Virus record (IMG/VR): IMGVR_UViG_3300025121_000011
Span: 1-64,000 of that record
Length of the DNA: 64,000 nt
Strand: one strand, 5' to 3'
This document shows, one piece after another, positions 1-20,511 of the stretch. The translations under genes and the position numbers were made by a program. Below the pieces are notes generated by a model. It was not told the origin of the DNA. It saw only the letters and a list, made by a program, of their open reading frames with translations, and searched no databases. Within the stretch, counting starts at the first letter, position 1, and each line of letters opens with the position of its first letter.

Positions 1-537
1 AATCCTCCTAAATATTTATCTGTATTGATTACTTATACAGTTGCCGCAGATGTTCTGCCTATATTTGAAAAGCATTTTCCGAAGGATTTAAGACCAAGAA
101 AAGCTGTTGAAGCGTCTAAGATGTATTTAGATGGATATGCGGTTGATGCTGATGCTGCTTATGTTGCTTATGCTGCTTATGCTGCTTATGTTGCTGTTTA
201 TGCTGCTTATGTCGCTGCTGATACTGCTTATGCTGCTTATGCTGCTAATGTCGCTTATTATGCTGCTAATGTCGCTTATTGTGCTGCTTATGCTACTGTT
301 AATGACATCGCTGATTATACTGCTTATGCTGTTTATTATGCAGCTCTTGCCTCTTCCGAAGAACACATCTTAAATCTTATTTTATCTCTGCTTCCTCAGA
401 TGATCGATTATGCTGTTGAAAATCAAATCAAGTTGTTTACCGGATCCGGAGATTTCTCAGAGATATTTGAGATGTTAACCGATGAGCAGAAGAAGCTGGT
501 CATATATAATATGAATGTAATTGGGAGTTGGAAATGA
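1..537 (+). CDS. Imm5-like variable-core array protein, copy A1 (5' end lies before the window)
   Basis: Frame 1 is open from base 1 (NPPKYLSVLITYTVAADVLPIFE...DLRPRKAVE); Ala/Tyr core; conserved SSEEH...VIYNM C-module. Confidence 0.85.
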   Translation, partial: NPPKYLSVLITYTVAADVLPIFEKHFPKDLRPRKAVEASKMYLDGYAVDADAAYVAYAAYAAYVAVYAAYVAADTAYAAYAANVAYYAANVAYCAAYATVNDIADYTAYAVYYAALASSEEHILNLILSLLPQMIDYAVENQIKLFTGSGDFSEIFEMLTDEQKKLVIYNMNVIGSWK

Positions 538-1091
538 TTTCATCAGGAGATTTGGTTAAATTCATTAATCCTCCTAAATATTTATGCGTATTAATTGCTT
601 ATACAGTTGCCGCAGATGTTCTGCCTATATTTGAAAAGCATTTTCCGAAGGATTTAAGACCAAGAAAAGCTGTTGAAGCGTCTAAGATGTATTTAGATGG
701 ATATGCGGTTGTTGCTGCTGATGCTTATACTGCTGCTTATGCCGCTTATGCTGCTTATGATGCTTATGCTGCTAATGCTACTTATGATGCTAATGCTGCT
801 TATGCTGCTTATGCTGCTTATTATGCTGCCGCTGCTGCTTATGTTTATGCTACCGCTGTCGCTATTGCTAATACTGATTATGTCGCTCGTTATGCGGTTA
901 GAGTCTCTTCTAAAGAACATGTCTTTAATCTTATTTTATCTCTGCTTCCTCAGATGATCGATTATGCCGTTGAAAATCAAATTAAATTATTCACCGGACC
1001 TGGAGACTTCTCAGATATATTTGAGATGTTAACCGATGAACAGAAGAAATCGGTGATATACAATATGGATGTAATTGGAGGTTGGAAATGA
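534..1091 (+). CDS. Imm5-like variable-core array protein, copy A2
   Basis: ATG at 534 overlaps the previous TGA (ATGA) with GGAG upstream; VLPIFE..PKDLRPRKAVE resembles the Imm5-like N-terminal motif. Confidence 0.85.
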   Translation: MISSGDLVKFINPPKYLCVLIAYTVAADVLPIFEKHFPKDLRPRKAVEASKMYLDGYAVVAADAYTAAYAAYAAYDAYAANATYDANAAYAAYAAYYAAAAAYVYATAVAIANTDYVARYAVRVSSKEHVFNLILSLLPQMIDYAVENQIKLFTGPGDFSDIFEMLTDEQKKSVIYNMDVIGGWK

Positions 1092-1672
1092 TTTCATCAA
1101 GAAATTTGGTTAAATTCATTAATCCTCCAGAATATTTATGCGTATTGATTGCTTATACAGTTGCCGCAGATGTTCTGCCTATATTTGAAGAGAAGTATCC
1201 GAAGGATTTAAGACCGAGAAAAGCTGTTGAAGTTGCTAAGATGTATTTGGAGGGATATGCGGTTGTTGCTGCTGATGTTGATGCTGCTATTTATGCCGCT
1301 GCTGATGCTGCTGATGCTGCTTATGCTGCTAATGCTGCTAATGCTGCTTATTATGCTTATGTTGCTGTCGCTAATGTTGCTAATGCTGCTTATGCTGCTG
1401 CTTATGTTGCTTATTATGCCGCTGTTGCTGATGTTTCTTATACCGTTGCTTATGCTACTTATGCTGCTGATTATGCAGTTTCTGTTTCTTCCGAAGAACA
1501 CATCTTCAATTTGATTCTATCTCTGATTCCTCAGATGATCGATTATGCTGTTGAAAATCAAATCAAATTATTTACTGGATCCGGAGACTTCTCGGAGATA
1601 TTTGAGATGTTAATTGATGAACAGAAGAAGCTGGTGATATTTAATATGGATGTATTTAGGAATTGGAAATGA
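1088..1672 (+). CDS. Imm5-like variable-core array protein, copy A3
   Basis: Same architecture, ATGA coupling. Confidence 0.85.
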   Translation: MISSRNLVKFINPPEYLCVLIAYTVAADVLPIFEEKYPKDLRPRKAVEVAKMYLEGYAVVAADVDAAIYAAADAADAAYAANAANAAYYAYVAVANVANAAYAAAYVAYYAAVADVSYTVAYATYAADYAVSVSSEEHIFNLILSLIPQMIDYAVENQIKLFTGSGDFSEIFEMLIDEQKKLVIFNMDVFRNWK

Positions 1673-2247
1673 TTTCATCAAAGAATTTAGTTTACTTCAT
1701 TAATCCTCCTGAATATTTATCTGTATCGATTGCTTATACAGTTGCCGCAGATGTTCTGCCTATATTTGAAAAGCATTTTCCGAAGGATTTAAGACCAAGA
1801 AAAGCTGTTGAAGCGTCTAAGATGTATTTAGATGGATATGCGGTTGATTCTGCTGATGCTTATGATGCTGCTTATGCTGCTTATTCTGCTTATGCTGCTG
1901 CTTATGATGTTGCTGTCGCTGCTAATGCTGCTCATATTGTTTATGCTACTTATGCTGCTGCTGCTGCTAATGCTGCTGCTGCTGTTGTTAACGCTGCTAA
2001 TGCCACCGCTAATGCTGTTGCTGTTAATACTGCTTATGCCGTTTATTATGCAGTTTCTGCCTCTTCCGAAGAACACATCTTCAATCTTATTTTATCTCTG
2101 ATTCCTCAGATGATCGATTATGCTGTTGAAAATCAAATCAAGTTGTTCACCGGATCTGGAGACTTCTCGGAAATATTTGAGAAGTTAACCGATGAACAGA
2201 AGAAATCGGTGATATACAATATGGATGTAATCGGGAATTGGAAATGA
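1669..2247 (+). CDS. Imm5-like variable-core array protein, copy A4
   Basis: Same architecture, ATGA coupling. Confidence 0.85.
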   Translation: MISSKNLVYFINPPEYLSVSIAYTVAADVLPIFEKHFPKDLRPRKAVEASKMYLDGYAVDSADAYDAAYAAYSAYAAAYDVAVAANAAHIVYATYAAAAANAAAAVVNAANATANAVAVNTAYAVYYAVSASSEEHIFNLILSLIPQMIDYAVENQIKLFTGSGDFSEIFEKLTDEQKKSVIYNMDVIGNWK

Positions 2248-2837
2248 TTTCATCAAAAGATTTGGTTCTCTTCATTAATCCTCCTAAATATTTATCCGTA
2301 TTGATTGCTTATACAGTTGCCGAAGATGTTCTGCCTATATTTGAAAAACAGTATCCAAAGGATTTAAGACCGAGAAAAGCTGTTGAAGCGTCTAAGATGT
2401 ATTTAAATGGATATGCTGCTGATGCTAATGCTGCTTATGATGCTGCTAATGCTGCTTATGATGCTGCTAATGCTGCTTATGCTGCTTATGATGCTGCTAA
2501 TGCTGCTGCTTATGTTGCTTATTATGCTGCTAATGCTGCTGCTGCTTATGTTGCTTATTATGCTGTTTATGCTGTTAATGCTGCTAATGCTGCTTATTAT
2601 GCTGCTAGTGCCGTTTATTATGCAGCCAAAGCCTCTTCCGAAGAACACATCTTTAATCTTATTCTATCTCTGCTTCCTCAGATGATCGATTATGCTGTTG
2701 AAAATCAAATCAAGTTGTTCACCGGTTCTGGAGACTTCTCGGAAATATTTGAGATGTTAACTGATGAACAGAAGAAATCGGTGATATACAATATGGATAT
2801 GTTTTATTTAAGTAATAATAAATTACTTTTTAAGTAA
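2244..2837 (+). CDS. Imm5-like variable-core array protein, copy A5 (last of array, unique tail)
   Basis: Same architecture; similarity ends after YNMD. Confidence 0.85.
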   Translation: MISSKDLVLFINPPKYLSVLIAYTVAEDVLPIFEKQYPKDLRPRKAVEASKMYLNGYAADANAAYDAANAAYDAANAAYAAYDAANAAAYVAYYAANAAAAYVAYYAVYAVNAANAAYYAASAVYYAAKASSEEHIFNLILSLLPQMIDYAVENQIKLFTGSGDFSEIFEMLTDEQKKSVIYNMDMFYLSNNKLLFK

Positions 2838-2893
2838 TTGTCACTACAATATTATTATAATATCATCGGTATAAGTATATTGTAGGAGGTAAA

Positions 2894-3283
2894 ATGATGC
2901 AGTATGTTGAAGTAAGACATAATCTATATATTTGTTTTAATCCATTTGAAATTGTTGAAGAATCAAGAAAAGTTAATGGGTGTGGAAATAAGTATTATAA
3001 AATTCCTATTATATTATTAATGTTTTTAACTCCAATATTAGGTGGGTTATTTGTAATAGCCTTTCCAATGATTATATTCGCTTCTATCATTTATTCTATC
3101 TTTGCAATAATATTTGGAAATATGAAAGAAGATGTTTTAGGCTTTGGAGTTCAAGAATATGATCCAATTATATCTTATTTAGCAAATCGTGAAATAAAAG
3201 ATTTACCATTAGAAGAAGAAGAATTAGAAGAAGAATTAAAAGAGTTGGTATCTGAAGTTGAAATAGTTAGAAAATCTGAATAA
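2894..3283 (+). CDS. Small membrane protein
   Basis: AGGAGG RBS; long hydrophobic segment IPIILLMFLTPILGGLFVIAFPMIIF; acidic tail. Confidence 0.7.
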   Translation: MMQYVEVRHNLYICFNPFEIVEESRKVNGCGNKYYKIPIILLMFLTPILGGLFVIAFPMIIFASIIYSIFAIIFGNMKEDVLGFGVQEYDPIISYLANREIKDLPLEEEELEEELKELVSEVEIVRKSE

Positions 3284-3568
3284 ACCATAAAATAATGAGT
3301 ATAAATAATATTTTGATTATAGATATATTGAATGGAAATATCACCACTAATTAATATATATAATAGGGGGGGCAATACAATGTGATATTTTCTTTTTTTA
3401 AATGGCGGTGTTTGAGGCTATATCTGGTATATCGCAGTTAAGATGCGTGAGGATCTTTGATATGCCGAACAGTGATGTCGACAAATAAATTTTGATTGTT
3501 TTGTGTTATGATTGAAGGCGGTGTATCCTATCTATCTATGTTTTTATAGTAGGTGAGGATACGTTTTG

Positions 3569-3750
3569 GGGCAATTAGCTTATAACTGGATAAAGCATAT
3601 ATATAAAGATTATGAAGCTAATAACAGTATGCATGTTGTTATTAGATTATTATCTTCTACTAACTTATGTAAAGTTACGTTGTGGCCGCAGCGTAAAGAA
3701 AAGTAAGAATATGTAAAGTATAAAAGTGGGTTCGAATCCTACATTGCTCT
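3569..3750 (+). ncRNA. tRNA-like RNA with ~110-nt structured insert in the anticodon arm (intron-containing tRNA or tRNA mimic)
   Basis: Acceptor GGGCAAT(3569-75)/ATTGCTC(3743-49); U8A9; D-stem GCTT/AAGC with GG in the loop; T-arm GTGGG-TTCGAAT-CCTAC(3726-42); no encoded CCA. Confidence 0.8.
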
Positions 3751-3759
3751 TATAAAAGA

Positions 3760-4779
3760 TTATTTGAATGAAAACAAACCTACGTCAACAATTTTTAAAT
3801 GATTATCTTTTGTGGACATCATAATGTTTTCAGCGTGAACATCTTTCCAATGAATATTATAACTGCCTGATATAAATCGTAATGTGTCAAGTAGACCTTG
3901 TATATTTTCAGCAACATCATTATTAGGTCTTTTATTAAATATTTCTTCTGAATACGGAAATGCTATTTTAAAAAGTTCTTCTGATAGAAGATCATATATA
4001 ATATCTTTGATATTATAATAATTCGGATTACTGGTGTGTTTTTCAATTATATTAACAACTTGTGTTAAACTCAAAGTGTTTGTTTTTGGAAAATCTTTTA
4101 ATATTTGTTCTATTGTTGAAATATCAACATCCTCTTTAATTCTCTTTTGAATTTCTATTTCTATTTGGGTAATAAAAAGTGGTGTAAGTATTTTACGCCA
4201 AATATCTTTTCTGTATACTTTTGCCGCAGAAAATTCGCTAGCAACTTCGGCTGGAAGTGGTTTTAATTGTTCCATAACAATTAAATCATATAATTCATTT
4301 TCTGGCATAATTGTTCCACGTTTAATTAAATATATTTTTGGAAAATAGTCTGCATATTGTTTTGGCATTTGTTCTATGCGTTTTTGCAGAGCACCCCATA
4401 TTGGAAAGTCATTTGCTAAATAGCTGATAGTGATTTTTGCTGCAACTTGTTGACCCTTATAAATCGCGGAAAATACGCTACCAAATGCACCGGAGCCAAG
4501 ATGCTCCTTTGCATTTTGAGGCACCATTTGCAATCCATTTTCTTTTAGTATTTTTGCAGCCAAACTAATGATAACGGTTTGGTACTTATCTGATTTTTGT
4601 GCCGAAGGAATTATCTTTTCTAAATATTCTTCATCAGATATGGATTTTTCACCAAACTCTTCAGCATCTTCTTTATATCTATCTTCGAAAGATTGGTGTA
4701 ATTCAGAAACTGCTTGAGATTCAACAGTCAGATGTAAATCATTAAGTATTGTCTGCAAAATTTTAAGATAATCTTTCAT
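3760..4779 (-). CDS. Protein kinase-like (Hanks-type fold) protein
   Basis: LGSGAFGSVF Gly-loop, VAAKI Lys, WKDVHAENIM catalytic loop, KIVDVG. Confidence 0.85.
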   Translation of the reverse strand: MKDYLKILQTILNDLHLTVESQAVSELHQSFEDRYKEDAEEFGEKSISDEEYLEKIIPSAQKSDKYQTVIISLAAKILKENGLQMVPQNAKEHLGSGAFGSVFSAIYKGQQVAAKITISYLANDFPIWGALQKRIEQMPKQYADYFPKIYLIKRGTIMPENELYDLIVMEQLKPLPAEVASEFSAAKVYRKDIWRKILTPLFITQIEIEIQKRIKEDVDISTIEQILKDFPKTNTLSLTQVVNIIEKHTSNPNYYNIKDIIYDLLSEELFKIAFPYSEEIFNKRPNNDVAENIQGLLDTLRFISGSYNIHWKDVHAENIMMSTKDNHLKIVDVGLFSFK

Positions 4780-4814
4780 GCTGATTTCCTCGTTATTATA
4801 ATGTAATGCGTATA

Positions 4815-4821
4815 ATTAGTA
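4815..4821 (-). promoter_or_regulatory. TACTAAT candidate late-promoter motif
   Basis: 35 nt upstream of the kinase start; same motif upstream of 17531, 20902 and 27524. Confidence 0.5.
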
Positions 4822-4856
4822 TGACTTAATATGAAAATTAATTTACTTGGAGAACA

Positions 4857-5405
4857 ATGAATCCTTCTTTAAATATTCCATTATTTGAACTCGTTAAAGC
4901 AAAAGATCCTGTTTGTGATATTTTGGGTAATGAAATTATCCGAGGACAGGTGATAGCTTATAGTAAGGGTAGTCGTGGGCAAAGGAATCTGCTTGTCGGG
5001 GTAGTATCATGTCTTGTTCCTCATGGAAAAGGATATTCTATTCATTTAGTTTCCCAATCTGAATGGCACAATTGTAATCATCAGACTTATGCGGGAATAG
5101 ACAATTCTATTGTAATTCTGCATAATCCTCTTTATAGTTTAAATTCAAAAGTAATTGCTAATTTATTTGAAAATGTGGAGTCAATTAAAGGTAAGTCTCA
5201 TGGAGATGTTCAAGAGTTTAATGCAGAAAAAGGACCTGGTTACAGTTTTTATAGAAAAATTCATTGGAAAAATATCTTGCCAATGAATTATAAGTTTGGG
5301 GAAGCATTAGATTTGGAACAATATATTTCAATTCCAAATAAAAAAGAATTGGCTAAATTAGATAAAGCTTTTAAAGAAAAATATAAAAATATTACTGTAT
5401 ATTAG
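4857..5405 (+). CDS. Hypothetical protein
   Basis: 182-aa ORF with GGAG RBS. Confidence 0.7.
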   Translation: MNPSLNIPLFELVKAKDPVCDILGNEIIRGQVIAYSKGSRGQRNLLVGVVSCLVPHGKGYSIHLVSQSEWHNCNHQTYAGIDNSIVILHNPLYSLNSKVIANLFENVESIKGKSHGDVQEFNAEKGPGYSFYRKIHWKNILPMNYKFGEALDLEQYISIPNKKELAKLDKAFKEKYKNITVY

Positions 5406-5673
5406 GTTTAAAATTAATTATGATATACTATCAAGCCTTGGTAATGGATAGATAGAGATAAAACACAATGATGTATAATGGTGCTAGTCCGTGGGAAGAT
5501 ATATTAGGTGGTGAAGATATGGAATCAGTTAATATATCCATAGGATGCATTTTGAGACTTGGACTAAGTCTCAAAGAATAGTTGTAATTAATTTTTTGTT
5601 TTAACGATAGAATAAATTTTATCATATAAATAAAATAAAGATAGTAATAAGATTATATATTTACGGAGGTTTA

Positions 5674-6126
5674 ATGAGCCAAGAGAAATATGAAGCCAAA
5701 ATTCAAAAATATATACTTCTTATAGAGGCTAATCCAAATGATAAAACTCTAGATGATATAAGATTTGAAGTCACACTTCATCAGTTTTATCCCATTACGT
5801 GTCGAGATATAGAGATTGGGTGTGAATGTCCTGTTGGCTGGCGTAAAATTGTAGAATGTGCAATTTCCGCTATAGAAGAGATAGCAACAAATACCACTTC
5901 TTCTCCACCGCAAGTGGTTCAAATAAAACAAAAATACGGCACATTAAGAATATATATGATGTCAGAAGGCCATCCAGATGTTAGTAGAATTATAGATTTA
6001 GCTGAAAAGAAGTGTCATCGGACATGCACAAAATGTGGAGACTCTGGAATATTTAGAACTCAAATTCCTTGGGGTGGAGTATTGTGCGATCATCATTATG
6101 AGATATGGGTGACAGAGCATATTTAA
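5674..6126 (+). CDS. Hypothetical phage protein with C-terminal CxxC
   Basis: GGAGG RBS; GW...VVQIKQKYGTLRIY...CTKCG...LCDHH pattern. Confidence 0.75.
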   Translation: MSQEKYEAKIQKYILLIEANPNDKTLDDIRFEVTLHQFYPITCRDIEIGCECPVGWRKIVECAISAIEEIATNTTSSPPQVVQIKQKYGTLRIYMMSEGHPDVSRIIDLAEKKCHRTCTKCGDSGIFRTQIPWGGVLCDHHYEIWVTEHI

Positions 6127-6181
6127 TTACATTATTTCATGAATATTAGAATCCGCCTGATATGGCGAAGTTAGGTTTGGA

Positions 6182-7157: not shown

Positions 7158-7183
7158 AATATATAATCTACAGAGAGTTATCA

Positions 7184-7930
7184 ATGTCCATAGGTCTAAA
7201 AATAGATAATTTGCCAACTTTTAATATTGTTCCGGATTTTAATTTATTTGTGACGGGTGGATTCGTTCGAGATTCTCTTTTGCATATTGCATCAAAAGAT
7301 ATAGACATTGCTTGCGAAGCAAAAAGCTTTACAGAAATGTCCGATTGGGTAGAAAAAACTCATAGTAAAGTTTTCTTATCTAATCCTGAGTTCTTAACTA
7401 TTCGAGCCTTATATAAAAAAGGTGATGCACGAGATTATGTCTTGTGTCGAAAAGATGGAGCTTACAGTGATGGACGACATCCGGATGAAGTGAGTGCTGG
7501 TTCTATTCTGGATGATTTATCTCGACGGGACTTTACGATTGGAGCCATGGCAATAGACCTTAAAACTGGTCAGCTAATCGATCCTCACGGTGGGGCGTCT
7601 GATTTAAAACAACGCCTCATAAGAACCGTGGGGCGTGCTAGCGATAGGTTTGAAGAAGACCCGTTACGAATGTTGCGCGCTATTAGGTTTGCAATTACCA
7701 AGGGATTCTTTATTTCAGATGAAATTCTAAATATTTTATCAAATCCGGATTGGGCGGAGAAACTTTTGACAGTTTCTTCAGAAAGAATAAGAGAAGAAGT
7801 GTTTAAATGTTTTGTATTTGATACAGTTAGAAGTATGGAATTTTTATGTTCACATTGCTCTGCTGAGCTAAAAAATATAATTTTTGGCAATACAGGAATC
7901 TGGTTGAAGCCCACTATGGAGGCTCGATAA
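7184..7930 (+). CDS. cca: CCA-adding enzyme / poly(A) polymerase family nucleotidyltransferase (short form)
   Basis: GGFVRD, DIDI, DLSRRDFT, EDPLRMLRAIRF, ERIREE motifs. Confidence 0.9.
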   Translation: MSIGLKIDNLPTFNIVPDFNLFVTGGFVRDSLLHIASKDIDIACEAKSFTEMSDWVEKTHSKVFLSNPEFLTIRALYKKGDARDYVLCRKDGAYSDGRHPDEVSAGSILDDLSRRDFTIGAMAIDLKTGQLIDPHGGASDLKQRLIRTVGRASDRFEEDPLRMLRAIRFAITKGFFISDEILNILSNPDWAEKLLTVSSERIREEVFKCFVFDTVRSMEFLCSHCSAELKNIIFGNTGIWLKPTMEAR

Positions 7931-9638: not shown

Positions 9639-10319
9639 ATGTCAGACAAATATCCAAGATCCATGCACCTCCCATTTTCCCCTGGGACCACATCAGATGA
9701 TCGCATTATGAACGAAGACGACTTAGCTTTTTTGATTAGTCAGGAAGTGTTATTGACTGAAAAAATGGATGGTTCAAATGTGTGCTTTACAAAAGACGAG
9801 GTATTTTCACGCTCTCACAGCGGGCCTCCTTCTCATAAATCTTTTGATACGTTAAAATTATTGCACAAACAAAAGCAAAGCTTAATACCACCCAATATTT
9901 CAGTCTTTGCAGAGTGGACTTATGCCGTGCACTCAATACGATACACTCTTTTGCCATCTCATATATTTATCATAGGAATTAGAGATGATGAATTAAATTT
10001 TTGGTGGCCATGGGATGAAGTATCTTTGTTTGCAAAATCAAAACTCGAACTTCCCACGGTTCCAGTTATACTGCGCGGTATGTTTCCAGACAAAGAAGTT
10101 TTTGAAAAAATAATTGTGGATTTTTCAAAACTTTCTTCATTTTATGGACCAGATCGGGAAGGGTTGGTGGTTCGACATACCTCCGAGCTTTATGATGCAG
10201 ATAAAAAAATTCTTGGTCTTGGCAAAATGGTTCGTAAAAATCATGTTACAACCGATGTTCATTGGTCTCGACAACAAATTGAAGTACAGCCCACGCTAAA
10301 TTATTTTCAAAAAAAATGA
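9639..10319 (+). CDS. ATP-dependent RNA ligase family protein
   Basis: KYPRS.HLPFSPG N-terminus; motif I TEKMDGSN (KxDG); FAEW; REGLVVR; KMVR. Confidence 0.85.
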   Translation: MSDKYPRSMHLPFSPGTTSDDRIMNEDDLAFLISQEVLLTEKMDGSNVCFTKDEVFSRSHSGPPSHKSFDTLKLLHKQKQSLIPPNISVFAEWTYAVHSIRYTLLPSHIFIIGIRDDELNFWWPWDEVSLFAKSKLELPTVPVILRGMFPDKEVFEKIIVDFSKLSSFYGPDREGLVVRHTSELYDADKKILGLGKMVRKNHVTTDVHWSRQQIEVQPTLNYFQKK

Positions 10320-11321: not shown

Positions 11322-11876
11322 ATGGTAAGAGCAGAGACTCGGAGGCAAAGATACCGTAGAAAGTTGGGTGATAAAATTCTTTTGCCAGCAAGCTTTACTA
11401 CGGTTTGTTTTAACTTTGATGATAATCTTGCTTTTTTACTCCGTACGGCTGCGTGTTTTGGGTTTAGTCACATTAATGTGATCGGGTCTATTCCAGCTAG
11501 AAGCAAAATAGATGCCAAGTCTGGTAGTCTTTTTGATTTTATAGAGATACGACAATATCCAAATCCCCACGCTTTTATGGAGATGGTGCGAGCAGAAAAG
11601 ATTTATTTGGTATCCGCAGATTTATCACCGTCAGCTGATAGTTTATATGAGTATAAGTTTAAATTTGATATTCATACGTCCATTGTGATTGGAAACGAGA
11701 CAACCGGAATCCCTGTTGAAATTTCAATCAATAGTGATGAGGTTTTTATTCCGATGCCTGGACCTGGATATTGTCTTAACGCCAGTCAGAGTGGTACTGT
11801 TTTTGCCGCTGAATATAGTCGACAGCTATTTATGCATCGTCCTATACTTAAAAAAGAATTTTCACAGGTGATATAG
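11322..11876 (+). CDS. SpoU/TrmH family RNA 2'-O-methyltransferase
   Basis: N.A.LLRTAACFG, IVIGNETTGI, FIPMPG...CLNAS SPOUT motifs. Confidence 0.88.
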   Translation: MVRAETRRQRYRRKLGDKILLPASFTTVCFNFDDNLAFLLRTAACFGFSHINVIGSIPARSKIDAKSGSLFDFIEIRQYPNPHAFMEMVRAEKIYLVSADLSPSADSLYEYKFKFDIHTSIVIGNETTGIPVEISINSDEVFIPMPGPGYCLNASQSGTVFAAEYSRQLFMHRPILKKEFSQVI

Positions 11877-13405: not shown

Positions 13406-13454
13406 AAATATTGATTTTAGATATTCAAATTTCTTAAGAAAGAATAAATATTTA

Positions 13455-13816
13455 GGGGGCGAAATAGATTTCGACAGGGTGGATTAAATTAATGGTGCAA
13501 GTCGTCTACGATAACAATAGACGTTAAAGTTGTTATAAAAAAATCAATTGCTGAATTAAAACTCGCAGCTTAATCTTTAAGATTAAGTCCAGGTTTCTAA
13601 CCACCTGGTTTCCAAGGTTAGATAAGCGGTTGGCCACGCTGACAGAAAACAAATGCCAAAATGGTTACCCTCATTGTATGAGGTGGAATTCCTTAGCTCA
13701 TTTAAGGAATGGTTGGAAAAAAGAGATACTTTGCTTATTTAGAGAAATAAGACAAGCTTGTAAATGACCAGATGTTGAAGCTGCTTTGGACGAGGGTGCG
13801 ATTCCCTCCGCCTCCA
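13455..13816 (+). ncRNA. ssrA: tmRNA
   Basis: GGGGGCG...GATTTCGAC 5' end pairs with CGCCTCC-A (G3.U70 Ala determinant); T-arm GAGGG-TGCGATT-CCCTC; pk1 CGTCTA/TAGACG plus ATAACAA/TTGTTAT; tag 13550-13573 AELKLAA*. Confidence 0.95.
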
Positions 13817-13855
13817 CTATTTAACGGTGTCTTGTAAAGGAGGGTTTTGAGAATA

Positions 13856-14473: not shown

Positions 14474-14501
14474 TGAGCAGATTTAACTCTAAGGTGAAGT
14501 A

Positions 14502-14732: not shown

Positions 14733-15061
14733 GGACCCTTAAAATGATAGAAATGGAAAAATCTCTTGAAGAGGAATTGCTTGATTTTGGATTTAAAAGA
14801 GTAATATCCATTAAAAATGTAACATTCACAAGGATACCTTTGAAATATAAGTGTTATACGTATAAGAATGACCAAATGTCTATTTGCATTTTTATATATA
14901 TAAGTTTAAAAAATATATGGCATAATCATGCGGCATGGGTATATGAGGAATATGATGAAGGCCAATTATTAAAGGCTCTATGTGGAGAATATCAAGATAT
15001 AGAATATTATCTTCCATTAGAATTAAGAGAAAGATTGTTGTATCATTTGTATGAATTGTAA
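14729..15061 (+). CDS. Hypothetical protein with C-terminal tag A
   Basis: Ends EYQDIEYYLPLELRERLLYHLYEL. Confidence 0.65.
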   Translation: MRTLKMIEMEKSLEEELLDFGFKRVISIKNVTFTRIPLKYKCYTYKNDQMSICIFIYISLKNIWHNHAAWVYEEYDEGQLLKALCGEYQDIEYYLPLELRERLLYHLYEL

Positions 15062-15326
15062 TAAATATTTATCACGAAGAATGGTGTGATAGATTTATTG
15101 TATAAATGTAATACTTATCAAGTTACCGAAGCATATTCGTGTTGAGATGTTATATTATTCAGATATATTACTCGGGCTTTCTAAATAACAATATATGTCA
15201 TTTTTTTCTTAGAAGGTGGACAAAAAAATGACATAATCACTGGATGCAGTATTTCTATGCAGATTAAAGAATGTAGAAATTTTTGCTAATGGTAGTAGGA
15301 TTTTTCATCAGTTATATAGGAGTGTT

Positions 15327-15986
15327 ATGGATAGAAAAGTACATTGGGTTTCTAGATCAAAAGATAAAAAGACAGGAGAGGTTTTGGTTTCTTATTCTCC
15401 AAAAGAAACTTGTCCAAAAACTTGTTCTCTTAAAAAAGGAGGGTGTTACGCATGGGGTCTTTATTATTTAAAATCGTTGGGAGATAAATTATCCTCTGGA
15501 AAACTGGTTCCAAGAACATTAGATATTGCTATTAAGAATATCTTGCCTACAACAAAAATAGCGCGTCATAGGGTGGCTGGAGATGTTGTCGGGGATGTAG
15601 CTGCTACAATACAAGAATGTCGGGATCTAGATTCGGCGGGATTAATTAATATAGGATATACTCACAATTGGAGAGCAGCAGAATCTCAACCCTTAAAGCA
15701 TTACTTCAGAGCATCATGTCAATCAGTTGAAGAGGTATTAATCGCTAGAGAAATGGGTTGGGCAACAACTTTGATTGTCTCACAAGGTGTAGATAAAAAA
15801 ACCAAACTTCCTAATGGTGAATTTTCAGTAAAATGTCCGGCTAAACATGATATCGCTGGAAAGAAAGATGTTACCTGTAATACCTGCACATTATGTCGAG
15901 TGGATGGTAAAACGGAAAAGACAACAGTTATGTTTGAAGTGCATGGAAATAATTCAACTATTCAGAAGGCTAATGGAAAAATTTGA
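15327..15986 (+). CDS. Cys-rich phage protein, possible Fe-S / radical-SAM-like fold
   Basis: TCPKTCSLKKGGCYA, RHRVAGD, YTHNW, CPA...CNTCTLC. Confidence 0.65.
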   Translation: MDRKVHWVSRSKDKKTGEVLVSYSPKETCPKTCSLKKGGCYAWGLYYLKSLGDKLSSGKLVPRTLDIAIKNILPTTKIARHRVAGDVVGDVAATIQECRDLDSAGLINIGYTHNWRAAESQPLKHYFRASCQSVEEVLIAREMGWATTLIVSQGVDKKTKLPNGEFSVKCPAKHDIAGKKDVTCNTCTLCRVDGKTEKTTVMFEVHGNNSTIQKANGKI

Positions 15987-16007
15987 TAAAATTATAGGAG
16001 TAAAGTA

Positions 16008-16253
16008 ATGGGAGATTGGATTGGAAATAGAGTCGAAGAGGCTTTAGGAGCACTTCGTGGGGCTATGTATGATTTAAAAGTAGAAAACAATAAGGCTCAT
16101 GTTGTACTGGATTCATACGATATTCCGCAGTATACGGATGGCGAACTAAGTCGCCCACTCACATTGTCAGAAAGAATACAACTTAATCATGAAAAAGATC
16201 AAAATTATATTTTAAAATTATGTGAACAATTATTCATCGCAAGTAACGTTTAA
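16008..16253 (+). CDS. Hypothetical protein
   Basis: AGGAG RBS. Confidence 0.65.
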   Translation: MGDWIGNRVEEALGALRGAMYDLKVENNKAHVVLDSYDIPQYTDGELSRPLTLSERIQLNHEKDQNYILKLCEQLFIASNV

Positions 16254-16282
16254 CTAAATAAAAAAATAGAAAAAGTAACAAT

Positions 16283-16633
16283 ATGTTTGGAGAGTATATG
16301 AAAAAAAATCCTGAAGCAGGAGAATTGGTTTGCCTTAGTTCTAATGATAAATTTGCTTATCCGCATGGAGTAGCTTTATACTTAGATGATGGTAAAGTGG
16401 TTTTACCATCTTATTTGAAGGGGTGGGTTGTAACCGATATTGATGGTTTAGAAAATTATAGCACATTTGGCCGACATAATATCAGGAAAACACATTTCAA
16501 TGAATATGGAGAGATATGTGGATATGATTATTTAGCATATGATGCAGGTATTCCAACCGAACTTTGTCTTAGAAGAACAAATGGAGAATGGATTATTTCA
16601 AATGAGTTTAAACTTCCGACGTGGGTTCAGTAG
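16283..16633 (+). CDS. Hypothetical protein
   Basis: ORF; alternative start at 16298 has a GGAG RBS. Confidence 0.6.
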   Translation: MFGEYMKKNPEAGELVCLSSNDKFAYPHGVALYLDDGKVVLPSYLKGWVVTDIDGLENYSTFGRHNIRKTHFNEYGEICGYDYLAYDAGIPTELCLRRTNGEWIISNEFKLPTWVQ

Positions 16634-17531
16634 TTTTAAACAGATCATCAAAGAAACTCATTCCTCTTTCATCTATAATAGAATTCATAACTTCTGAATA
16701 TTTTTTAGAAACATTTTGTTGAATGGTGTGAATAACTTTATCAAAGTCTGGTAAGATCTGGCCTTCTGTTGCCCACTGGATGCCCATAATTGCGATAGAT
16801 AAACCAATATCTATCCAAAATAAAGATCCGGCAGATACAAGTTCTATAAAAGCCAAAACAGCATCTTTTACTGCATCTATAGAATTTGCAATTAATCCGA
16901 TAAATTCTTTAATAAAACCACGAGAAGCTTTTGATAACTGATCAACAGAGATTGTTTTTTCAGGGTCCTCACGAGTTTGTTCTGTGATGGAATTTAGTAT
17001 TTTTGGATCTAATGCATCTTTCCAAGAAATTCCTAAAGTGTCAGAAACACCTAAAACATTAGATAATTCTTTGGAGCCGTAATATAGGTTTTTTAATGCA
17101 AAAGCAATACTGAAGAATACACCAATAAAAGGAATGGCGCGCAAAGTAGCCCCAGCCAAAGCTTGCTTTATTAAGATTGGATTATGTTCAATTTGAGATA
17201 GATGTTTCAATGTTGCGGTTTTAGTTTCACTTGATATCATTTGATCAACATATTTGCCAGCCTCTTTTAAGGCATTTGGATCCGCACTTCTAATTTTATT
17301 TCCAGCATCGGCTAATTGACCGATTCCTACAGAAAAGTATTGCATGGCTCTGGTGTTTAAAGTTGGCTCATAAGGTTTTGCAACTTCTGAAAATGTGTGT
17401 CGCCATTGTTCAAATTCTTTATTTAGATTTGCATCTAGTGCTAAAATAATTAATTGACGCGTTTCCAAAGAGGCGTCTATATAATTATAGTGGTCTAAAA
17501 TTTTAGAAAGTTGAAGAAGTTGTTTATTCAT
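16608..17531 (-). CDS. Putative virion/ejected protein with N-terminal leader motif and hydrophobic helices
   Basis: MNKQLLQLSKILDHYNYIDASLETRQLI leader; LRAIPFIGVFFSIAFAL and FWIDIGLSIAIMGI helices; GAGG RBS. Confidence 0.7.
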   Translation of the reverse strand: MNKQLLQLSKILDHYNYIDASLETRQLIILALDANLNKEFEQWRHTFSEVAKPYEPTLNTRAMQYFSVGIGQLADAGNKIRSADPNALKEAGKYVDQMISSETKTATLKHLSQIEHNPILIKQALAGATLRAIPFIGVFFSIAFALKNLYYGSKELSNVLGVSDTLGISWKDALDPKILNSITEQTREDPEKTISVDQLSKASRGFIKEFIGLIANSIDAVKDAVLAFIELVSAGSLFWIDIGLSIAIMGIQWATEGQILPDFDKVIHTIQQNVSKKYSEVMNSIIDERGMSFFDDLFKTTEPTSEV

Positions 17532-17556
17532 TGTTGCCTCATTTTCTTAGTTTAAA

Positions 17557-17563
17557 ATTAGTA
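17557..17563 (-). promoter_or_regulatory. TACTAAT candidate late-promoter motif
   Basis: 25 nt upstream of the 17531 start. Confidence 0.5.
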
Positions 17564-17574
17564 GAGGATATATT

Positions 17575-18663
17575 ATGAAAGTAGTAAAAAGTAGCGAAGA
17601 AGTGGATCAGCTTATTTTACAATTAACATCAAAAGAGTTTTTGGGTTTACAACCTATTTTGGCAGGAGGGTTTGTAGCTTGGTTATATCAATTGGAGACT
17701 AATAGTCAAGAACAAATACCAGAGATTATAACTGCATATAAGAATATGAAGAAAATAAGAGAAACGGCATCCATTGCTGGCGTAAATTTAAATATTATTA
17801 CAACAGTAAAATATGATTTTTTATCTAATTATCCATATTATGATATAGATGCTTGGTTTAAAAATACAAATGATGTTTGGGATATTAATAATCCAGAGTC
17901 TGTTTTGATAACCGCAGAAGGAGAACGAGATCTCTTAAAAGAGATGGCAATTAAAATAGGCTTTCAAGATGTAAAGCATCAGTCTCTCTGGGCAAATACA
18001 TTATCTAGGCGTATCCGCTCTGATAATCATGAAGATAAATTGCAAATTATAATTCGACCATATTCTTCTACAGAAGAGATATTATCATCTTTTGATTTAG
18101 ACGGATGTAAGATTGGTTGGGAAAATGGATTTTTTCATCTTACAGATGAGTTTTTAGAGTCTATCCAAAATAGAAGAATAATTATAAATGATAATAATTG
18201 GAAATCTTCAGAACATTTTCAAAGAGTACAAACGGCGCTTAGAGCTTTCAAGTATCACAAAAGAATGGGATGGCCACTTTCTAAAGACTCTTTAAATAAG
18301 ATTTTTGAAGTTTATCAAGAAGTGTTCTCTCATAAAAAATATAAAGTTTCTGTTGTAAAAACAACAAGTCTAATCACCAAGGTTAGTACCGGGATTTCAT
18401 CAGTTTTGTCAAAAATATTACCAAAAATGTCGCCACATATGGCTCATCAGATTTCGATTTATGGACAGAATAAAAGCGTAGATGTGTTAAAGGATTTTCA
18501 GATGAAACTGTTGGATTCTTTTGAGATAATTGTTGTTCAGCCGGATTTCGAAAGTAGCATGCTTCCGTATTTTATTGGTACAGGTAATTATAAGATAGAA
18601 AAATTAGTTTTGGCTATGATGGAGTGTGAATCTAACAATAATTCTAGTACGTCAAAAATATGA
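17575..18663 (+). CDS. Divergent nucleotidyltransferase-fold protein with C-terminal motif B
   Basis: ILAGGF, DIDAWF, LQII, ILSSFDL..CKIG, R..KY..R pattern. Confidence 0.7.
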   Translation: MKVVKSSEEVDQLILQLTSKEFLGLQPILAGGFVAWLYQLETNSQEQIPEIITAYKNMKKIRETASIAGVNLNIITTVKYDFLSNYPYYDIDAWFKNTNDVWDINNPESVLITAEGERDLLKEMAIKIGFQDVKHQSLWANTLSRRIRSDNHEDKLQIIIRPYSSTEEILSSFDLDGCKIGWENGFFHLTDEFLESIQNRRIIINDNNWKSSEHFQRVQTALRAFKYHKRMGWPLSKDSLNKIFEVYQEVFSHKKYKVSVVKTTSLITKVSTGISSVLSKILPKMSPHMAHQISIYGQNKSVDVLKDFQMKLLDSFEIIVVQPDFESSMLPYFIGTGNYKIEKLVLAMMECESNNNSSTSKI

Positions 18664-18740
18664 ATGTAGAGAATTCTTCTATATTTAAATTTATTTAGAT
18701 GATGTATTTGCATTCATAATTTATATTTTATTATAATACG

Positions 18741-19337
18741 GTGAGTATTTGTATGTTACCAGATTCATTGGTTTATTTTATTCAACCTTCATCATACTTA
18801 GCTGTATTAATTGCTTATACGGTAGCTATGGATGTTTTGCCAATATTTGAAACGCAGAGACCAACAGATGATAAACTTAGGCAAATCATTAGTGTATGTA
18901 AGATGTATTTAAAATATATCTTAATTGATGTTAGGTCGCTGAATGATGATATTAAACGCTTATCTCGTGAACTTAAGTCCTACAATCCTGCTATGGACAG
19001 TTATGAATATATTTATATTGTTAACACAGCTGTTAGTGTTTTTGCAACTTTAAATTCTGCTATTAGATTTAAGAAAACTGGTATACTTATTAATCAGATA
19101 GATGCTTCTCTTAATAATGCTGCTGATGTTGTTTATTATGCAGCTCTCGCCTCTTCCGAAGAACACATCTTCAATTTGATTCTATCTCTGTTTCCTCAGA
19201 TGATCAATTATGCTGTTGAAAATCAAATCAAGTTGTTCACCGGACCTGGAGATTTCTCAGAGATATTTGAGATGTTAACCGATGAACAGAAGAAGCTGGT
19301 GATATATAATATGGATGTAATTGGAAATTGGAAATGA
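18741..19337 (+). CDS. Imm5-like array paralog B1 with non-repetitive core
   Basis: Diverged N-module (VLIAYTVAMDVLPIFE); unique core; near-identical C-module from ~19130. Confidence 0.8.
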   Translation: MSICMLPDSLVYFIQPSSYLAVLIAYTVAMDVLPIFETQRPTDDKLRQIISVCKMYLKYILIDVRSLNDDIKRLSRELKSYNPAMDSYEYIYIVNTAVSVFATLNSAIRFKKTGILINQIDASLNNAADVVYYAALASSEEHIFNLILSLFPQMINYAVENQIKLFTGPGDFSEIFEMLTDEQKKLVIYNMDVIGNWK

Positions 19338-19951
19338 TTTCATCAAAAGATTTGGTTTTATTCATTAATCCTCCTAAATATTTATCCGTATTAATTGCTT
19401 ATACAGTTGCCGCAGATGTTCTGCCTATATTTGAAAAGCATTTTCCGAAGGATTTGAGACCGAGAAAAGCTGTTGAAGTTGCTAAGATGTATTTGGAGGG
19501 ATATGCGGTTGTTGCTGCTGATGTTGATGCTGCTGCTTATGATGCTGCTGATGCTGCTTATGATGCTGCTAATGCTGCTTATGATGCTGCTAATGCTGCT
19601 TATGCTGCTTATACTAATGTTGTTGTTGTTAATGCCGCTGTTTATGCTGTTTATTATGCCGCTGCTCATGCTGCTTATGCTGCTCATGCTTCTTATGCTG
19701 CTACTTATGCTGCTTCTTATGCTGCTTCTTATGCTGCTTCTGCTGCTTGTTATGCAGCCAAAGCCTCTTCCGAAGAACACATCTTCAACCTGATTTTATC
19801 TCTGCTTCCTCAGATGATCGATTATGCTGTTGAAAATCAAATTAAGTTATTCACAGGACCCGGAGATTTCTCAGGAATATTTGAGATGTTAACCGATGAG
19901 CAGAAGAAGCTGGTGATATTTAATATGGATGTAATTGGGAATTGGAAATGA
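19334..19951 (+). CDS. Imm5-like variable-core array protein, copy B2
   Basis: Same modules as array A; ATGA coupling. Confidence 0.85.
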   Translation: MISSKDLVLFINPPKYLSVLIAYTVAADVLPIFEKHFPKDLRPRKAVEVAKMYLEGYAVVAADVDAAAYDAADAAYDAANAAYDAANAAYAAYTNVVVVNAAVYAVYYAAAHAAYAAHASYAATYAASYAASYAASAACYAAKASSEEHIFNLILSLLPQMIDYAVENQIKLFTGPGDFSGIFEMLTDEQKKLVIFNMDVIGNWK

Positions 19952-20511
19952 TTTCATCAAGAGATTTAGTTTACTTCATTAATCCTCCAAAATATTTATC
20001 CGTATTAATTGCTTATACAGTTGCCACAGATGTTCTGCCTATATTTGAAAAGCAGCATTCGAAGGATTTAAGACCAAGAAAAGCTGTTGAAGCGTCTAAG
20101 ATGTATTTGGATGGATATGCGGTTGATGCTGTTTATGCTGCTCATGCTTCTGCTGCTTATGCTGCTTATGTCACTGCTGATACTGTTTATGCTGCTTATG
20201 CTGCTAATGCTGCTGCTAATGCTGCTGCTGCTTATGCTGCTTATGCCGCTTATGTTGTTGTTGATTATGCTGCTTATGCTGTTTATTATGCAGCTCTTGC
20301 CTCTTCCGAAGAACACATCTTCAACCTGATTTTATCTCTGCTTCCTCAGATGATCAATTATGCTGTTGAAAATCAAATCAAGTTGTTTACGGGATCTGGA
20401 GATTTCTCAGAGATATTTGAGATATTAACCGATGAACAGAAGAAACCAGTGATATACAATATGGATGTAATTGGGAGTTTAAAGAGTATAATTTTAGAAA
20501 AGGAGAAATGA
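19948..20511 (+). CDS. Imm5-like variable-core array protein, copy B3
   Basis: Same modules; unique tail after MDVIGS. Confidence 0.85.
   Translation: MISSRDLVYFINPPKYLSVLIAYTVATDVLPIFEKQHSKDLRPRKAVEASKMYLDGYAVDAVYAAHASAAYAAYVTADTVYAAYAANAAANAAAAYAAYAAYVVVDYAAYAVYYAALASSEEHIFNLILSLLPQMINYAVENQIKLFTGSGDFSEIFEILTDEQKKPVIYNMDVIGSLKSIILEKEK

What the first reader, a model, noticed from the sequence alone, without database searches (positions are those of the whole stretch)
534..20511. Constant modules are mosaics shuffled between arrays 17 kb apart
Seen: diagnostic variants assort independently. B2 (19334) shares VEVAKMYLEGYAVVAADVDAA and KKLVIFNMD only with A3 (1088), SKDLVLFINPPKYLSVL with A5 (2244), and GPGD with A2 (534) and B1. 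LIPQ marks A3/A4; KKSVIY marks A2/A4/A5. Inference: ongoing gene conversion or recombination homogenises the flanks while swapping cores, possibly aided by the phage's own SbcCD and PD-(D/E)XK nucleases.
Basis: partly seen in the sequence, partly recalled or inferred. Interest (0 to 1): 0.6.

Follow-up and report, generated by a model that had tools for sequence, protein, structure and literature searches.

The report
Recombining Imm5-like gene arrays in huge phage
A 335-kb groundwater phage carries about a dozen tandem copies of a small immunity-protein-like gene whose conserved ends and repetitive middles have been shuffled between copies and between arrays by homologous recombination, a process known from bacterial immunity-gene clusters and here seen in a phage.

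Summary
The eight units (A1-A5, B1-B3) are ATGA-overlapping genes of about 190 aa with a constant N-module, an Ala/Tyr-rich core and a constant C-module. They are weak Imm5_like (PF21805) members. The whole 335-kb phage genome holds a third array (C1-C3), a decayed unit and a distant paralogue.

- **Mosaicism is not chance:** PHI p about 0.0005 and a GENECONV-like run test p about 0.001. Both stayed quiet on 100 simulations without recombination. The N- and C-module trees reject each other (AU 0.002 and 0.018).
- **No array structure:** identity within arrays equals identity between arrays.
- **B1 is half old, half new:** dS is about 1.0 in its 5' half and 0.10 in its 3' half.
- **Cores are mosaic too,** and they change by triplet slippage.
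- **Near-identical strains differ only inside the arrays,** at clean crossovers. Some of these delimit 5.6-56 kb accessory cassettes, but they could be short-read assembly path switches.
- **Homogenisation is only local:** dS is 0.02 in one N-module block and up to 0.9 elsewhere. Purifying selection keeps the protein modules constant.

Recombination between tandem immunity paralogues is already known in bacteria. The phage setting, exchange between arrays and GCT-triplet cores make this a new variant of a known kind.

The parts
1..537 (+). Unit A1, 3' part. The gene starts at 335010 of the circular record. The record's 127-nt end overlap lies in this N-module.
534..1091 (+). Unit A2 (185 aa). 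The only unit above Pfam's Imm5_like cut-off (28.8 bits against 25).
1088..1672 (+). Unit A3 (194 aa).
1669..2247 (+). Unit A4 (192 aa). Nt 1-216 are identical to A4' of relatives and nt 22-579 to A4* of relatives.
2244..2837 (+). Unit A5 (197 aa), last of array A, with its own C-terminal tail.
18753..19337 (+). Unit B1 (194 aa). It has a divergent N-module and a non-repetitive core. The 3' ~210 nt are of the standard type.
19334..19951 (+). Its N-module is nearest C2 (5 differences) and its C-module nearest C3 (3 differences). The core starts like A3 and has a middle segment like A5.
19948..20511 (+). Unit B3 (187 aa), last of array B.
1211..1288 (+). 78-nt stretch of A3 (N-module end plus 30 nt of core) identical to B2 19457-19534. 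This is the crossover site of the B2::A3 hybrid seen in L033/L034.
19457..19534 (+). B2 copy of the 78-nt stretch shared with A3.
2428..2489 (+). 62-nt core segment of A5 identical to B2 19551-19612, at a different offset in the core. Codon-shuffled cores gave at most 37 nt.
19551..19612 (+). B2 copy of the 62-nt core segment shared with A5.
19192..19306 (+). 115 nt of the B1 C-module identical to C2 (296513-296627), inside the 3' part of B1 with low synonymous divergence.
1142..1251 (+). 110 nt of the A3 N-module identical to C3 (296709-296818), about 40 kb away round the circle. Pairwise run test p=0.002.
594..711 (+). 118 nt of the A2 N-module identical to A4 1729-1846. It contains the near-zero-dS homology block (codons 22-35).
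1323..1331 (+). 9-nt in-frame indel in the A3 core. It is the only difference from a 109-kb contig of another sample over 12.6 kb.
1690..1884 (+). 195-nt overlap within which the A4'/A4* crossover (or an assembler path switch) lies. Relatives carry about 56 kb between the two parent units.
49868..51031 (+). SbcD-like metallophosphoesterase (context: the phage's recombination genes).
51911..55138 (+). SbcC/SMC-like ATPase interrupted by an intein with a LAGLIDADG domain (context).
56082..56813 (+). PD-(D/E)XK (Cas4-like) nuclease (context).

Best explanation
The units are paralogous genes of an Imm5-like, all-alpha, immunity-protein-like family. In this 335-kb phage record they sit in three same-strand tandem arrays: A with 5 units, B with 3 and C with 3 plus a decayed unit.

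Their DNA is a patchwork made by homologous recombination between copies.
- **Short non-reciprocal tracts** (roughly 60-200 nt) copy pieces of the N-module, core or C-module from one unit to another, within an array and between arrays 16-58 kb apart.
- **Unequal crossovers** in the same stretches fuse, delete or add units.
- **In-frame triplet slippage and misaligned exchange** change the cores. The cores are almost pure NNT codons, mostly GCT.

One block of the N-module (codons 22-35) is kept nearly identical at synonymous sites and is the likeliest landing pad. Purifying selection on the protein keeps the rest of the modules constant while old synonymous variants are reshuffled.

Shown: the mosaic, its statistical signature, B1's composite origin and the core slippage. 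Inferred: the tract lengths, the direction of transfers, the use of the phage's own RecA/UvsX-like and SbcCD-like machinery, and any benefit (a varied repertoire of toxin- or defence-neutralising proteins).
For: - **Family.** Pfam Imm5_like and Imm5 hits, with A2 above the cut-off. 318 homologues, most carrying PF21805. The P.D.RPR.A motif is nearly invariant in a 75-sequence alignment. The AF2 model is all-alpha with pLDDT 81. Its best structural match is chain B of 7JTU (Z 10.5, rmsd 2.6 A, 131 residues). 7JTU is the SsdA-SsdAI complex of a deaminase toxin with its all-helical immunity protein.
- **Recombination tests.** PHI p<0.0005 and run test p about 0.001, calibrated on simulations without recombination. 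Four-gamete failures rise from about 30% under 10 nt to about 68% beyond 100 nt. N data reject the C tree (AU 0.002) and C data reject the N tree (AU 0.018).
- **No array structure.** Identity within versus between arrays is 0.918/0.921 for N and 0.908/0.909 for C.
- **B1 is composite.** dS is about 1.0 in its N-module and 0.10 against C2 in its C-module.
- **Mosaic cores.** Exact core segments are shared at different offsets: A5-B2 62 nt, C2-F2 143 nt, C1-E2 65 nt, against a null maximum of 37.
- **Slippage.** A 9-nt core indel is the sole difference in 12.6 kb between two samples.
- **Strain comparisons.** Flanks are 100% identical for 6-8 kb, and differences begin at clean crossovers inside units.
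- **Enzymes.** A RecA-like gene and SbcCD-like and PD-(D/E)XK genes are present.
Against: - The count of four-gamete violations alone can be matched by a single tree with very uneven rates.
- Every large hybrid joint (A4, E2::A5, B2::A3::A4') lies in an exact repeat of 78-195 nt, long enough for a de Bruijn assembler to switch paths. The A4 hybrid protein is found on only two JGI contigs, from samples that also hold the 'missing' cassettes as orphan contigs.
- No read-level linkage could be obtained. Logan contigs shatter in the arrays.
- In a second genome's five-unit array the PHI-like test was not significant (p 0.14).
- No experiment ties the phage's recombination genes to the events. No cognate toxin is known, and the only DYW-deaminase match in the genome is a sub-threshold fragment.
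Confidence: 0.8

Rival explanations
1. Assembly artefact: the mosaics are chimeric paths that short-read assemblers took through near-identical repeats, not real molecules.
For: - Units share exact stretches of up to 138 nt, and 195 nt between A4' and A4*.
- G000's end overlap of 127 nt points to k=127.
- Big contigs of 294.5 and 305.7 kb break exactly at arrays A and C.
- A 1.9-kb MEGAHIT contig strings together four oddly recombined units.
- The A4 hybrid is seen on only 2 contigs.
- The 6.7-kb 'circular' cassette contig has only a 21-nt end overlap.
Against: - 57 four-gamete-violating site pairs lie under 31 nt apart, within single k-mers and reads.
- A1-A3 and B1-B3 are reproduced base for base in several independent JGI and ENA assemblies, and B2 is on 14 contigs.
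- The B2 core is present unchanged in four runs from four studies.
- B1's contrast in dS cannot come from path switching.

This rival remains live only for the large hybrid joints, where I put it at roughly 0.35.
Confidence: 0.07
2. No recombination: the units diverged on one tree, and the shared variants are recurrent mutations at a few fast or selected sites.
For: - Simulations on the best single tree with gamma shape 0.18 give 44% four-gamete pairs (maximum 67%) against 65% observed, and Rm 16 against 19.
- Many variable sites are two-state synonymous positions.
Against: - Compatible sites cluster along the sequence: PHI and run tests at the permutation floor, with 0-1% false positives in the same simulations.
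- Incompatibility rises with distance.
- AU tests reject a common tree.
- There are multi-site exact tracts of 110-138 nt in otherwise 8-14% divergent pairs.
- Synonymous divergence ranges 40-fold along the unit.
Confidence: 0.05
3. Ancient shuffling only: the family was scrambled when the arrays were founded by segmental duplications, and has since evolved by point mutation and selection, so nothing is 'ongoing'.
For: - C-module dS of 0.4-0.9 shows old haplotypes.
- The B array is identical in 12 large contigs.
- The recent events rest on joints that may be artefacts.
Against: - Exact tracts of 110-138 nt, a C-module pair differing at 3 of 168 sites (B2-C3) and an N-module block with dS 0.02 imply recent transfers.
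- No collinear block of units is shared between arrays, as segmental duplication would leave.
- A 9-nt core indel separates otherwise identical strains.
Confidence: 0.08
4. Targeted hypermutation (a diversity-generating retroelement or similar) writes the variable cores, and recombination plays no part in them.
For: 91% of core codons are NNT, with variation in codon positions 1 and 2. This resembles DGR variable repeats built on AAY codons.
Against: - No reverse transcriptase in the genome.
- Cores differ in length, 144-261 nt.
- Codons are dominated by GCT (43%) and TAT rather than spread over the 16 NNT codons.
- Long exact core segments are shared at shifted offsets.
Confidence: 0.02

Closest known systems
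Recombining tandem immunity-gene paralogues of type VII secretion systems (esaG, tipC; Garrett et al. 2022, PMC9484751)
   Same: Strings of non-identical immunity-type genes share conserved 5' and 3' sequence blocks. Recombination through those blocks makes chimeric genes and changes copy number between close strains.
   Different: - Here the genes sit in a phage, not a bacterial chromosome.
- The family is Imm5-like, not DUF600/EsaG.
- There are three dispersed arrays that exchange with one another.
- The variable part is a GCT-rich triplet-repeat core.
- No cognate toxin is known.
Imm5 / Imm5_like immunity proteins and homogeneous polyimmunity loci of polymorphic toxin systems (Zhang et al. 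2012, PMC3482391)
   Same: - Mostly alpha-helical protein with a conserved R/D motif.
- Tandem immunity-type genes with no toxin next to them.
- Imm5 is linked to DYW-type deaminase and CdiA-CT toxins.
- The model's best fold match is chain B of the complex of such a deaminase toxin with its immunity protein.
   Different: - Only one unit passes Pfam's cut-off.
- A ~60-aa C-module lies outside the Pfam model.
- The setting is a phage genome.
- Neutralising activity is untested.
PeSL-mediated modular shuffling in T4-type phages (Arbiol et al. 2010, PMC2839356)
   Same: Short repeated sequences scattered through plastic regions of a large recombination-proficient phage mark the ends of insertions, deletions and replacements between close relatives. 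Here all strain differences found begin inside arrays, and 5.6-56 kb cassettes lie between arrays.
   Different: PeSLs are non-coding promoter/stem-loop cassettes, whereas the repeats here are protein-coding modules. The mini-circle analogue is not supported, because the 6.7-kb contig has only a 21-nt end overlap.
Cassette gene conversion for antigenic variation (Neisseria pilE/pilS, Borrelia vlsE; from general knowledge)
   Same: Conserved flanks guide segmental conversion of a variable middle, giving mosaic genes.
   Different: There is no single expression site fed by silent cassettes. All units except the decayed C0 are intact, translationally coupled ORFs.

Membership tests
Imm5_like / Imm5 (PF21805, PF14423) | Score at or above Pfam's gathering cut-off (25 bits) | tested here: inconclusive
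   A2 scores 28.8 bits, B3 25.0 and A3 24.8; the other units score 14.6-22.5. Homologues reached at E 1e-22 to 1e-6 mostly carry PF21805.
Imm5_like / Imm5 (PF21805, PF14423) | Mostly alpha-helical, with conserved R and D residues (Zhang et al. 2012) | tested here: met
   The AF2 model has 11 helices and no strands, with pLDDT 80.9. E34, P38, D40, R42, P43, R44 and A46 are at least 90% conserved in 75 sequences.
Imm5_like / Imm5 (PF21805, PF14423) | Genomic or physical link to a toxin (DYW deaminase or CdiA-CT) | tested here: not met
   No toxin gene lies beside any array. The only DYW_deaminase match in the genome is a 15-bit fragment with a stop. There is fold similarity to chain B of 7JTU, the SsdA-SsdAI toxin-immunity complex, but no binding test.
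Recombining tandem immunity paralogues (esaG/tipC type) | Conserved homology blocks at both ends of non-identical tandem genes | tested here: met
   The N-module (171 nt) and C-module (168 nt) are 86-98% identical between units. Exact blocks reach 138 nt, and dS is 0.02 at N codons 22-35.
Recombining tandem immunity paralogues (esaG/tipC type) | Statistical evidence of recombination between paralogues | tested here: met
   PHI, the run test, AU tests and B1's composite dS.
Recombining tandem immunity paralogues (esaG/tipC type) | Gain or loss of units between closely related strains through the blocks | tested here: inconclusive
   Hybrid units A4, E2::A5 and B2::A3::A4' have clean crossovers and 100% identical flanks. 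All lie in repeats long enough for assembly path switches, and no reads were available.
Diversity-generating retroelement target | Reverse transcriptase plus a template/variable repeat pair of equal length | tested here: not met
   No RVT_1 match. Cores are of unequal length.
Silent-cassette antigenic variation locus | One expressed copy plus promoterless partial donor cassettes | tested here: not met
   Eleven full-length ORFs are joined by ATGA overlaps. Only C0 is decayed. Expression itself was not tested.

The most novel reading that the evidence does not exclude
The arrays may be a selected evolvability device rather than a passive by-product. Three features would work together as a recombination- and slippage-based generator of new variants of a toxin- or defence-neutralising protein:
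- a homology block kept identical even at synonymous sites;
- cores written almost entirely in GCT/NAT triplets, a bias also seen in a five-unit array of an unrelated 44%-GC genome and, more weakly, in a marine 252-kb contig;
- same-strand tandem layout.

The same repeats would act as portable homology that lets huge phages swap multi-kb accessory cassettes (CoA synthesis, RNA repair, translation genes) between strains.
Probability: 0.25. Interest if true: 0.8.

Novelty: new variant of a known kind. Interest (0 to 1): 0.55.

Why it matters
Huge phages carry many unexplained multi-copy families. This one can be read as an orphan 'polyimmunity' repertoire of a deaminase-immunity-like fold, sitting among counter-defence and RNA-repair genes: a Gad2-like gene directly upstream of array B, plus RNA ligase, a CCA-adding-type enzyme and tmRNA between the arrays.

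If the shuffling is real and ongoing, it shows a phage diversifying a putative anti-toxin set by the same recombination logic bacteria use for immunity genes. It also shows that such repeats may set the break points of strain-level genome plasticity.

There is a practical warning too. The 'complete, circular' 335-kb record may lack about 56 kb that relatives carry between two near-identical units.

Tried and rejected
- **Phage and plasmid-style look-ups** of the array DNA and protein in the INPHARED collection gave nothing.
- **Read laying** on 17600-21400 in four groundwater or soil runs gave only Logan contigs. The array breaks into pieces under 200 nt, so there is no linkage information. 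It did confirm the flanks and the B2 core.
- **Mini-circle idea** for the 6.7-kb 'DTR' cassette contig: rejected, because the end overlap is only 21 nt inside N-modules.
- **DGR idea** for the cores: rejected.
- **Raw four-gamete and Rm counts** as proof of recombination: downgraded after single-tree simulations reproduced much of them.
- **Promoter and terminator scans** around both arrays were no better than shuffles. The repeated 'terminator' is a 5-bp hairpin inside every N-module.
- **Foldseek against PDB and a profile search of PDB sequences** gave no significant hit. Only the exhaustive structural search did.
- **Replication in a second genome's array** (L055) confirmed the architecture and the NNT cores, but not significant mosaicism (n=5, p 0.14).
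- **Flanks of relatives' arrays** (4HBT/DFP cassette, RNA-ligase cassette, IF3/ThiF/tRNA-synthetase block) have no counterpart in G000 by blastn, tblastn or tblastx.

Full report
**What is there.** The window is the first 64 kb of a 335,169-bp virus record. Its ends overlap by 127 nt inside unit A1, so the assembly is circular. GC content is about 33%.

The finding's eight units are real genes of 185-205 aa: A1 1-537 (start at 335010), A2 534-1091, A3 1088-1672, A4 1669-2247, A5 2244-2837, B1 18753-19337, B2 19334-19951 and B3 19948-20511. Each stop overlaps the next start as ATGA. Each unit has three parts:
- a 57-codon N-module;
- a core of 144-261 nt made of Ala, Tyr, Val, Asp and Asn;
- a 56-codon C-module.

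- a third array, C1-C3, at 295604-297167;
- a decayed unit, C0, at about 295320-295607;
- a 26%-identical lone paralogue, D, at 327358-327951.

B1 is the odd one out, with a divergent N-module and a non-repetitive core.

**What the proteins are.**
- *Pfam.* The proteins give weak Imm5_like (PF21805) and Imm5 (PF14423) hits. Only A2 is clearly above the cut-off.
- *Homologues.* A word-indexed search found 318 homologues, most of them carrying PF21805. A 75-sequence alignment shows a nearly invariant P.D.RPR.A motif followed by Ala/Tyr-rich repeats, so the low-complexity core is a family trait.
- *Fold.* AlphaFold2 gives an all-helical model with pLDDT 80.9 and pTM 0.81. Foldseek found nothing significant in the PDB. 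An exhaustive structural scan put chain B of 7JTU first (Z 10.5, rmsd 2.6 A, 131 residues), ahead of two DUF416 structures and a Z 7 background.
- *What 7JTU is.* It is the complex of the T6SS ssDNA cytidine deaminase toxin SsdA with its all-helical immunity protein SsdAI. SsdA is described as DYW-like. Zhang et al. tie Imm5 to DYW deaminases and CdiA-CT toxins, and list it among the domains most often combined in polyimmunity proteins, which are encoded in small tandem immunity loci.
- *Caveat.* For helical bundles Z 10.5 is suggestive, not proof, and chain B was not checked to be the immunity protein. No toxin gene lies near the arrays, and the only DYW_deaminase match in the genome is a 15-bit fragment.

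I therefore treat the units as orphan, immunity-protein-like genes with an untested function.

**Checking the observation.** 'Only with A3' is true inside the window, but C3 and C2 outside it share the same variants.

At DNA level 37 of 171 N-module sites and about 40 of 168 C-module sites vary among the ten repeat-core units.

**Is it more than chance?**
- *PHI test.* Neighbouring informative sites are more compatible than shuffled ones, at the permutation floor (p<0.0002 to 0.0005).
- *Run test.* A GENECONV-like test on the longest runs of agreeing polymorphic sites gives a global p of about 0.001. The best pairs are A1-A2, A2-A4, C1-C2 and the inter-array pair A3-C3.
- *Calibration.* I ran both tests on 100 alignments simulated without recombination on the best single tree. 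PHI gave p<0.01 in none, and the run test gave p<0.02 in one.
- *A caution.* The same simulations show that raw four-gamete counts are not decisive. The observed 65% compares with a simulated mean of 44% and a maximum of 67%.
- *Distance effect.* Four-gamete failures rise with distance, from about 30% under 10 nt to about 68% beyond 100 nt.
- *Tree incongruence.* The N-module data reject the C-module tree (AU 0.002), and the C-module data reject the N-module tree (AU 0.018).

**Exchange between arrays.**
- Mean identity is the same within and between arrays: 0.918 against 0.921 for N, and 0.908 against 0.909 for C. Nearest neighbours are mostly in another array. B2's N-module is closest to C2 (5 differences) and its C-module to C3 (3 differences).
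- Exact shared tracts between arrays are A3-C3 110 nt, B1-C2 115 nt, A3-B2 78 nt and B2-C3 79 nt.
- The cleanest single case is B1. Its N-module has dS of about 1.0 against every other unit. Its C-module has dS of 0.10 against C2 and 0.2-0.5 against the rest. The 3' ~210 nt of an old, divergent gene were therefore replaced from a standard unit.

**How far are the flanks 'homogenised'?** Only locally.
- dS is 0.02 in N-module codons 22-35, the family's VLPIFE motif region.
- dS is 0.2-0.3 at the N-module ends and 0.24-0.9 across the C-module, where dN/dS is 0.10.

Most of the protein constancy is therefore due to purifying selection on old, reshuffled haplotypes. Only one block of about 40-120 nt behaves like a conversion-homogenised landing pad.

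**The cores.**
- *Codon bias.* 91% of the 679 core codons end in T. GCT makes up 88% of Ala codons, against 41% genome-wide, and GTA and GCA are almost absent.
- *Not a DGR.* The genome has no reverse transcriptase, core lengths differ, and GCT and TAT dominate.
- *Shared segments.* Cores share exact segments at shifted offsets: A5-B2 62 nt, C2 with F2 of relatives 143 nt, and C1 with E2 65 nt. Codon-shuffled cores gave at most 37 nt.
- *Slippage.* The only difference between G000 and a 109-kb contig from another sample over 12.6 kb is a 9-nt in-frame indel in the A3 core.
- *Seen elsewhere.* The same architecture and NNT bias (93% T) recur in a five-unit array of an unrelated 44%-GC genome. 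A weaker GCT bias is seen in a single-copy marine homologue.

**Strain comparisons.** Related contigs from the same groundwater project have flanks 100% identical to G000 for 6-8 kb and differ only from points inside units. Each hybrid unit resolves into clean crossovers:
- G000's A4 is A4' (nt 1-216) joined to A4* (nt 22-579).
- A unit in L037 is E2 (1-223) joined to A5 (130-594).
- A unit in L033/L034 is B2 (1-201), then A3 (124-526), then A4' (440-576).

In the 336- and 352-kb relatives, A4' and A4* are about 56 kb apart. Between them lie:
- a 5.6-kb 4HBT/DFP cassette;
- a further array, E1-E5;
- a long cassette with RNA ligase, RlaP, resolvase, IF3, ThiF and a tRNA-synthetase-like gene;
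- units F1 and F2.

None of this material has a counterpart in G000.

**Why I do not take these joints at face value.**
- Every joint lies in an exact repeat of 78-195 nt.
- The source assemblies are short-read, and G000's 127-nt end overlap suggests k=127.
- The A4 hybrid protein occurs on only two JGI contigs, whose samples also hold the cassettes as orphan contigs ending in units.
- The large contigs of other samples break exactly at arrays A and C.
- A 1.9-kb MEGAHIT contig looks like a chain of chimeras.
- The 6.7-kb 'circular' cassette contig has only a 21-nt end overlap.
- The reads tool could serve only Logan contigs, which shatter in the arrays.

The large events may therefore be real homologous crossovers or assembler path switches. 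G000 may lack about 56 kb.

The fine-scale mosaic does not depend on them. 57 violating site pairs lie under 31 nt apart. A1-A3 and B1-B3 are reproduced exactly in independent assemblies, and B2 is on 14 contigs.

**Mechanism.** The phage encodes the following recombination genes:
- a RecA/UvsX-like protein at 76075-76977;
- an SbcD-like phosphoesterase at 49868-51031;
- an SbcC/SMC-like ATPase at 51911-55138, interrupted by an intein;
- a PD-(D/E)XK nuclease at 56082-56813.

This is the gene set of recombination-dependent replication in T4-type phages (general knowledge). In such a replicating pool, same-strand repeats over 50 nt are expected to undergo non-crossover conversion, which leaves patches, and crossovers, which leave fusions, deletions and duplications. 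Triplet-periodic cores will also slip and misalign in frame. That these particular enzymes do it is inference.

**Comparison with known systems.**
- *Closest precedent.* Recombination between tandem esaG and tipC immunity paralogues through conserved 5' and 3' blocks (Garrett et al. 2022).
- *At the genome scale.* Repeats marking cassette boundaries recall PeSL-mediated modular shuffling in T4-type phages (Arbiol et al. 2010).
- *What is new.* The phage setting, an Imm5-like family, exchange among three dispersed arrays, and GCT-triplet cores conserved across distant genomes.

I rate this a new variant of a known kind, of moderate interest. The evolvability reading (probability about 0.25) would raise it.

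Noticed in passing
window 13455-13817 (+): ARAGORN calls a tmRNA gene with a 16-residue tag peptide, lying between arrays A and B.
   Followed up: no
window 17575-18663 (+): The 362-aa gene directly upstream of array B carries a precomputed Pfam hit to Gad2 (PF26128, a Gabija anti-defence family) in relatives' annotation. My Pfam copy gave no hit. PHROGs gave a weak nucleotidyltransferase hit.
   Followed up: partly
window 47899-49575 and 51911-55138 (+): Two replication or recombination genes contain inteins: a DnaG-type zinc-ribbon protein, and the SbcC/SMC-like ATPase, whose intein has a LAGLIDADG domain.
   Followed up: no
window cores, e.g. 705-905, 1259-1486, 19505-19765: Core codons are 91% NNT, and GCT makes up 88% of Ala codons against 41% genome-wide. 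The same bias appears in an unrelated five-unit array (L055 5001-7675, 93% T) and more weakly in a marine homologue (L057 4001-4540).
   Followed up: partly
window 46-58, 612-624, 1166-1178, 1747-1759, 19412-19424 (+): A 5-bp hairpin (GCAGA-TGT-TCTGC) followed by a T-rich run recurs in every N-module, inside the block with near-zero synonymous divergence. Whether it is a DNA or RNA element or a coincidence of the VLPIFE codons is unknown.
   Followed up: no
window 19391-19780 (-), 19473-19793 (+), 127-366 (-), 693-920 (-) and similar: Long ORFs in other frames and on the opposite strand of every core (Ser/Ile-rich or Leu/Met-rich) are by-products of the triplet repeat, not genes.
   Followed up: yes
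G000 295320-295607, 327358-327951 (outside the window): There is a decayed unit (C0, with stops and frameshifts, only the last ~20 codons intact) at the head of array C. There is also a lone 26%-identical paralogue (D) with a non-repetitive core.
   Followed up: partly
window 7184-7930, 9639-10319, 11322-11876: Genes between arrays A and B carry precomputed Pfam hits to PolyA_pol (CCA-adding type), RNA_ligase and SpoU methylase. Relatives' extra cassettes add T4-type RNA ligase 1, RlaP, IF3 and a tRNA-synthetase-like gene. The arrays therefore sit in an RNA-repair and translation-rich, strain-variable region.
   Followed up: no
whole record G000: The record is scored complete because of its 127-nt end overlap. 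It may nevertheless lack about 56 kb that the 336- and 352-kb relatives carry between two near-identical units. Orphan contigs with that DNA exist in G000's own sample.
   Followed up: partly
window 46820-47902 and 56825-57541 (+): An FtsK/SpoIIIE-type ATPase and a sigma-70-like factor flank the nuclease cluster.
   Followed up: no
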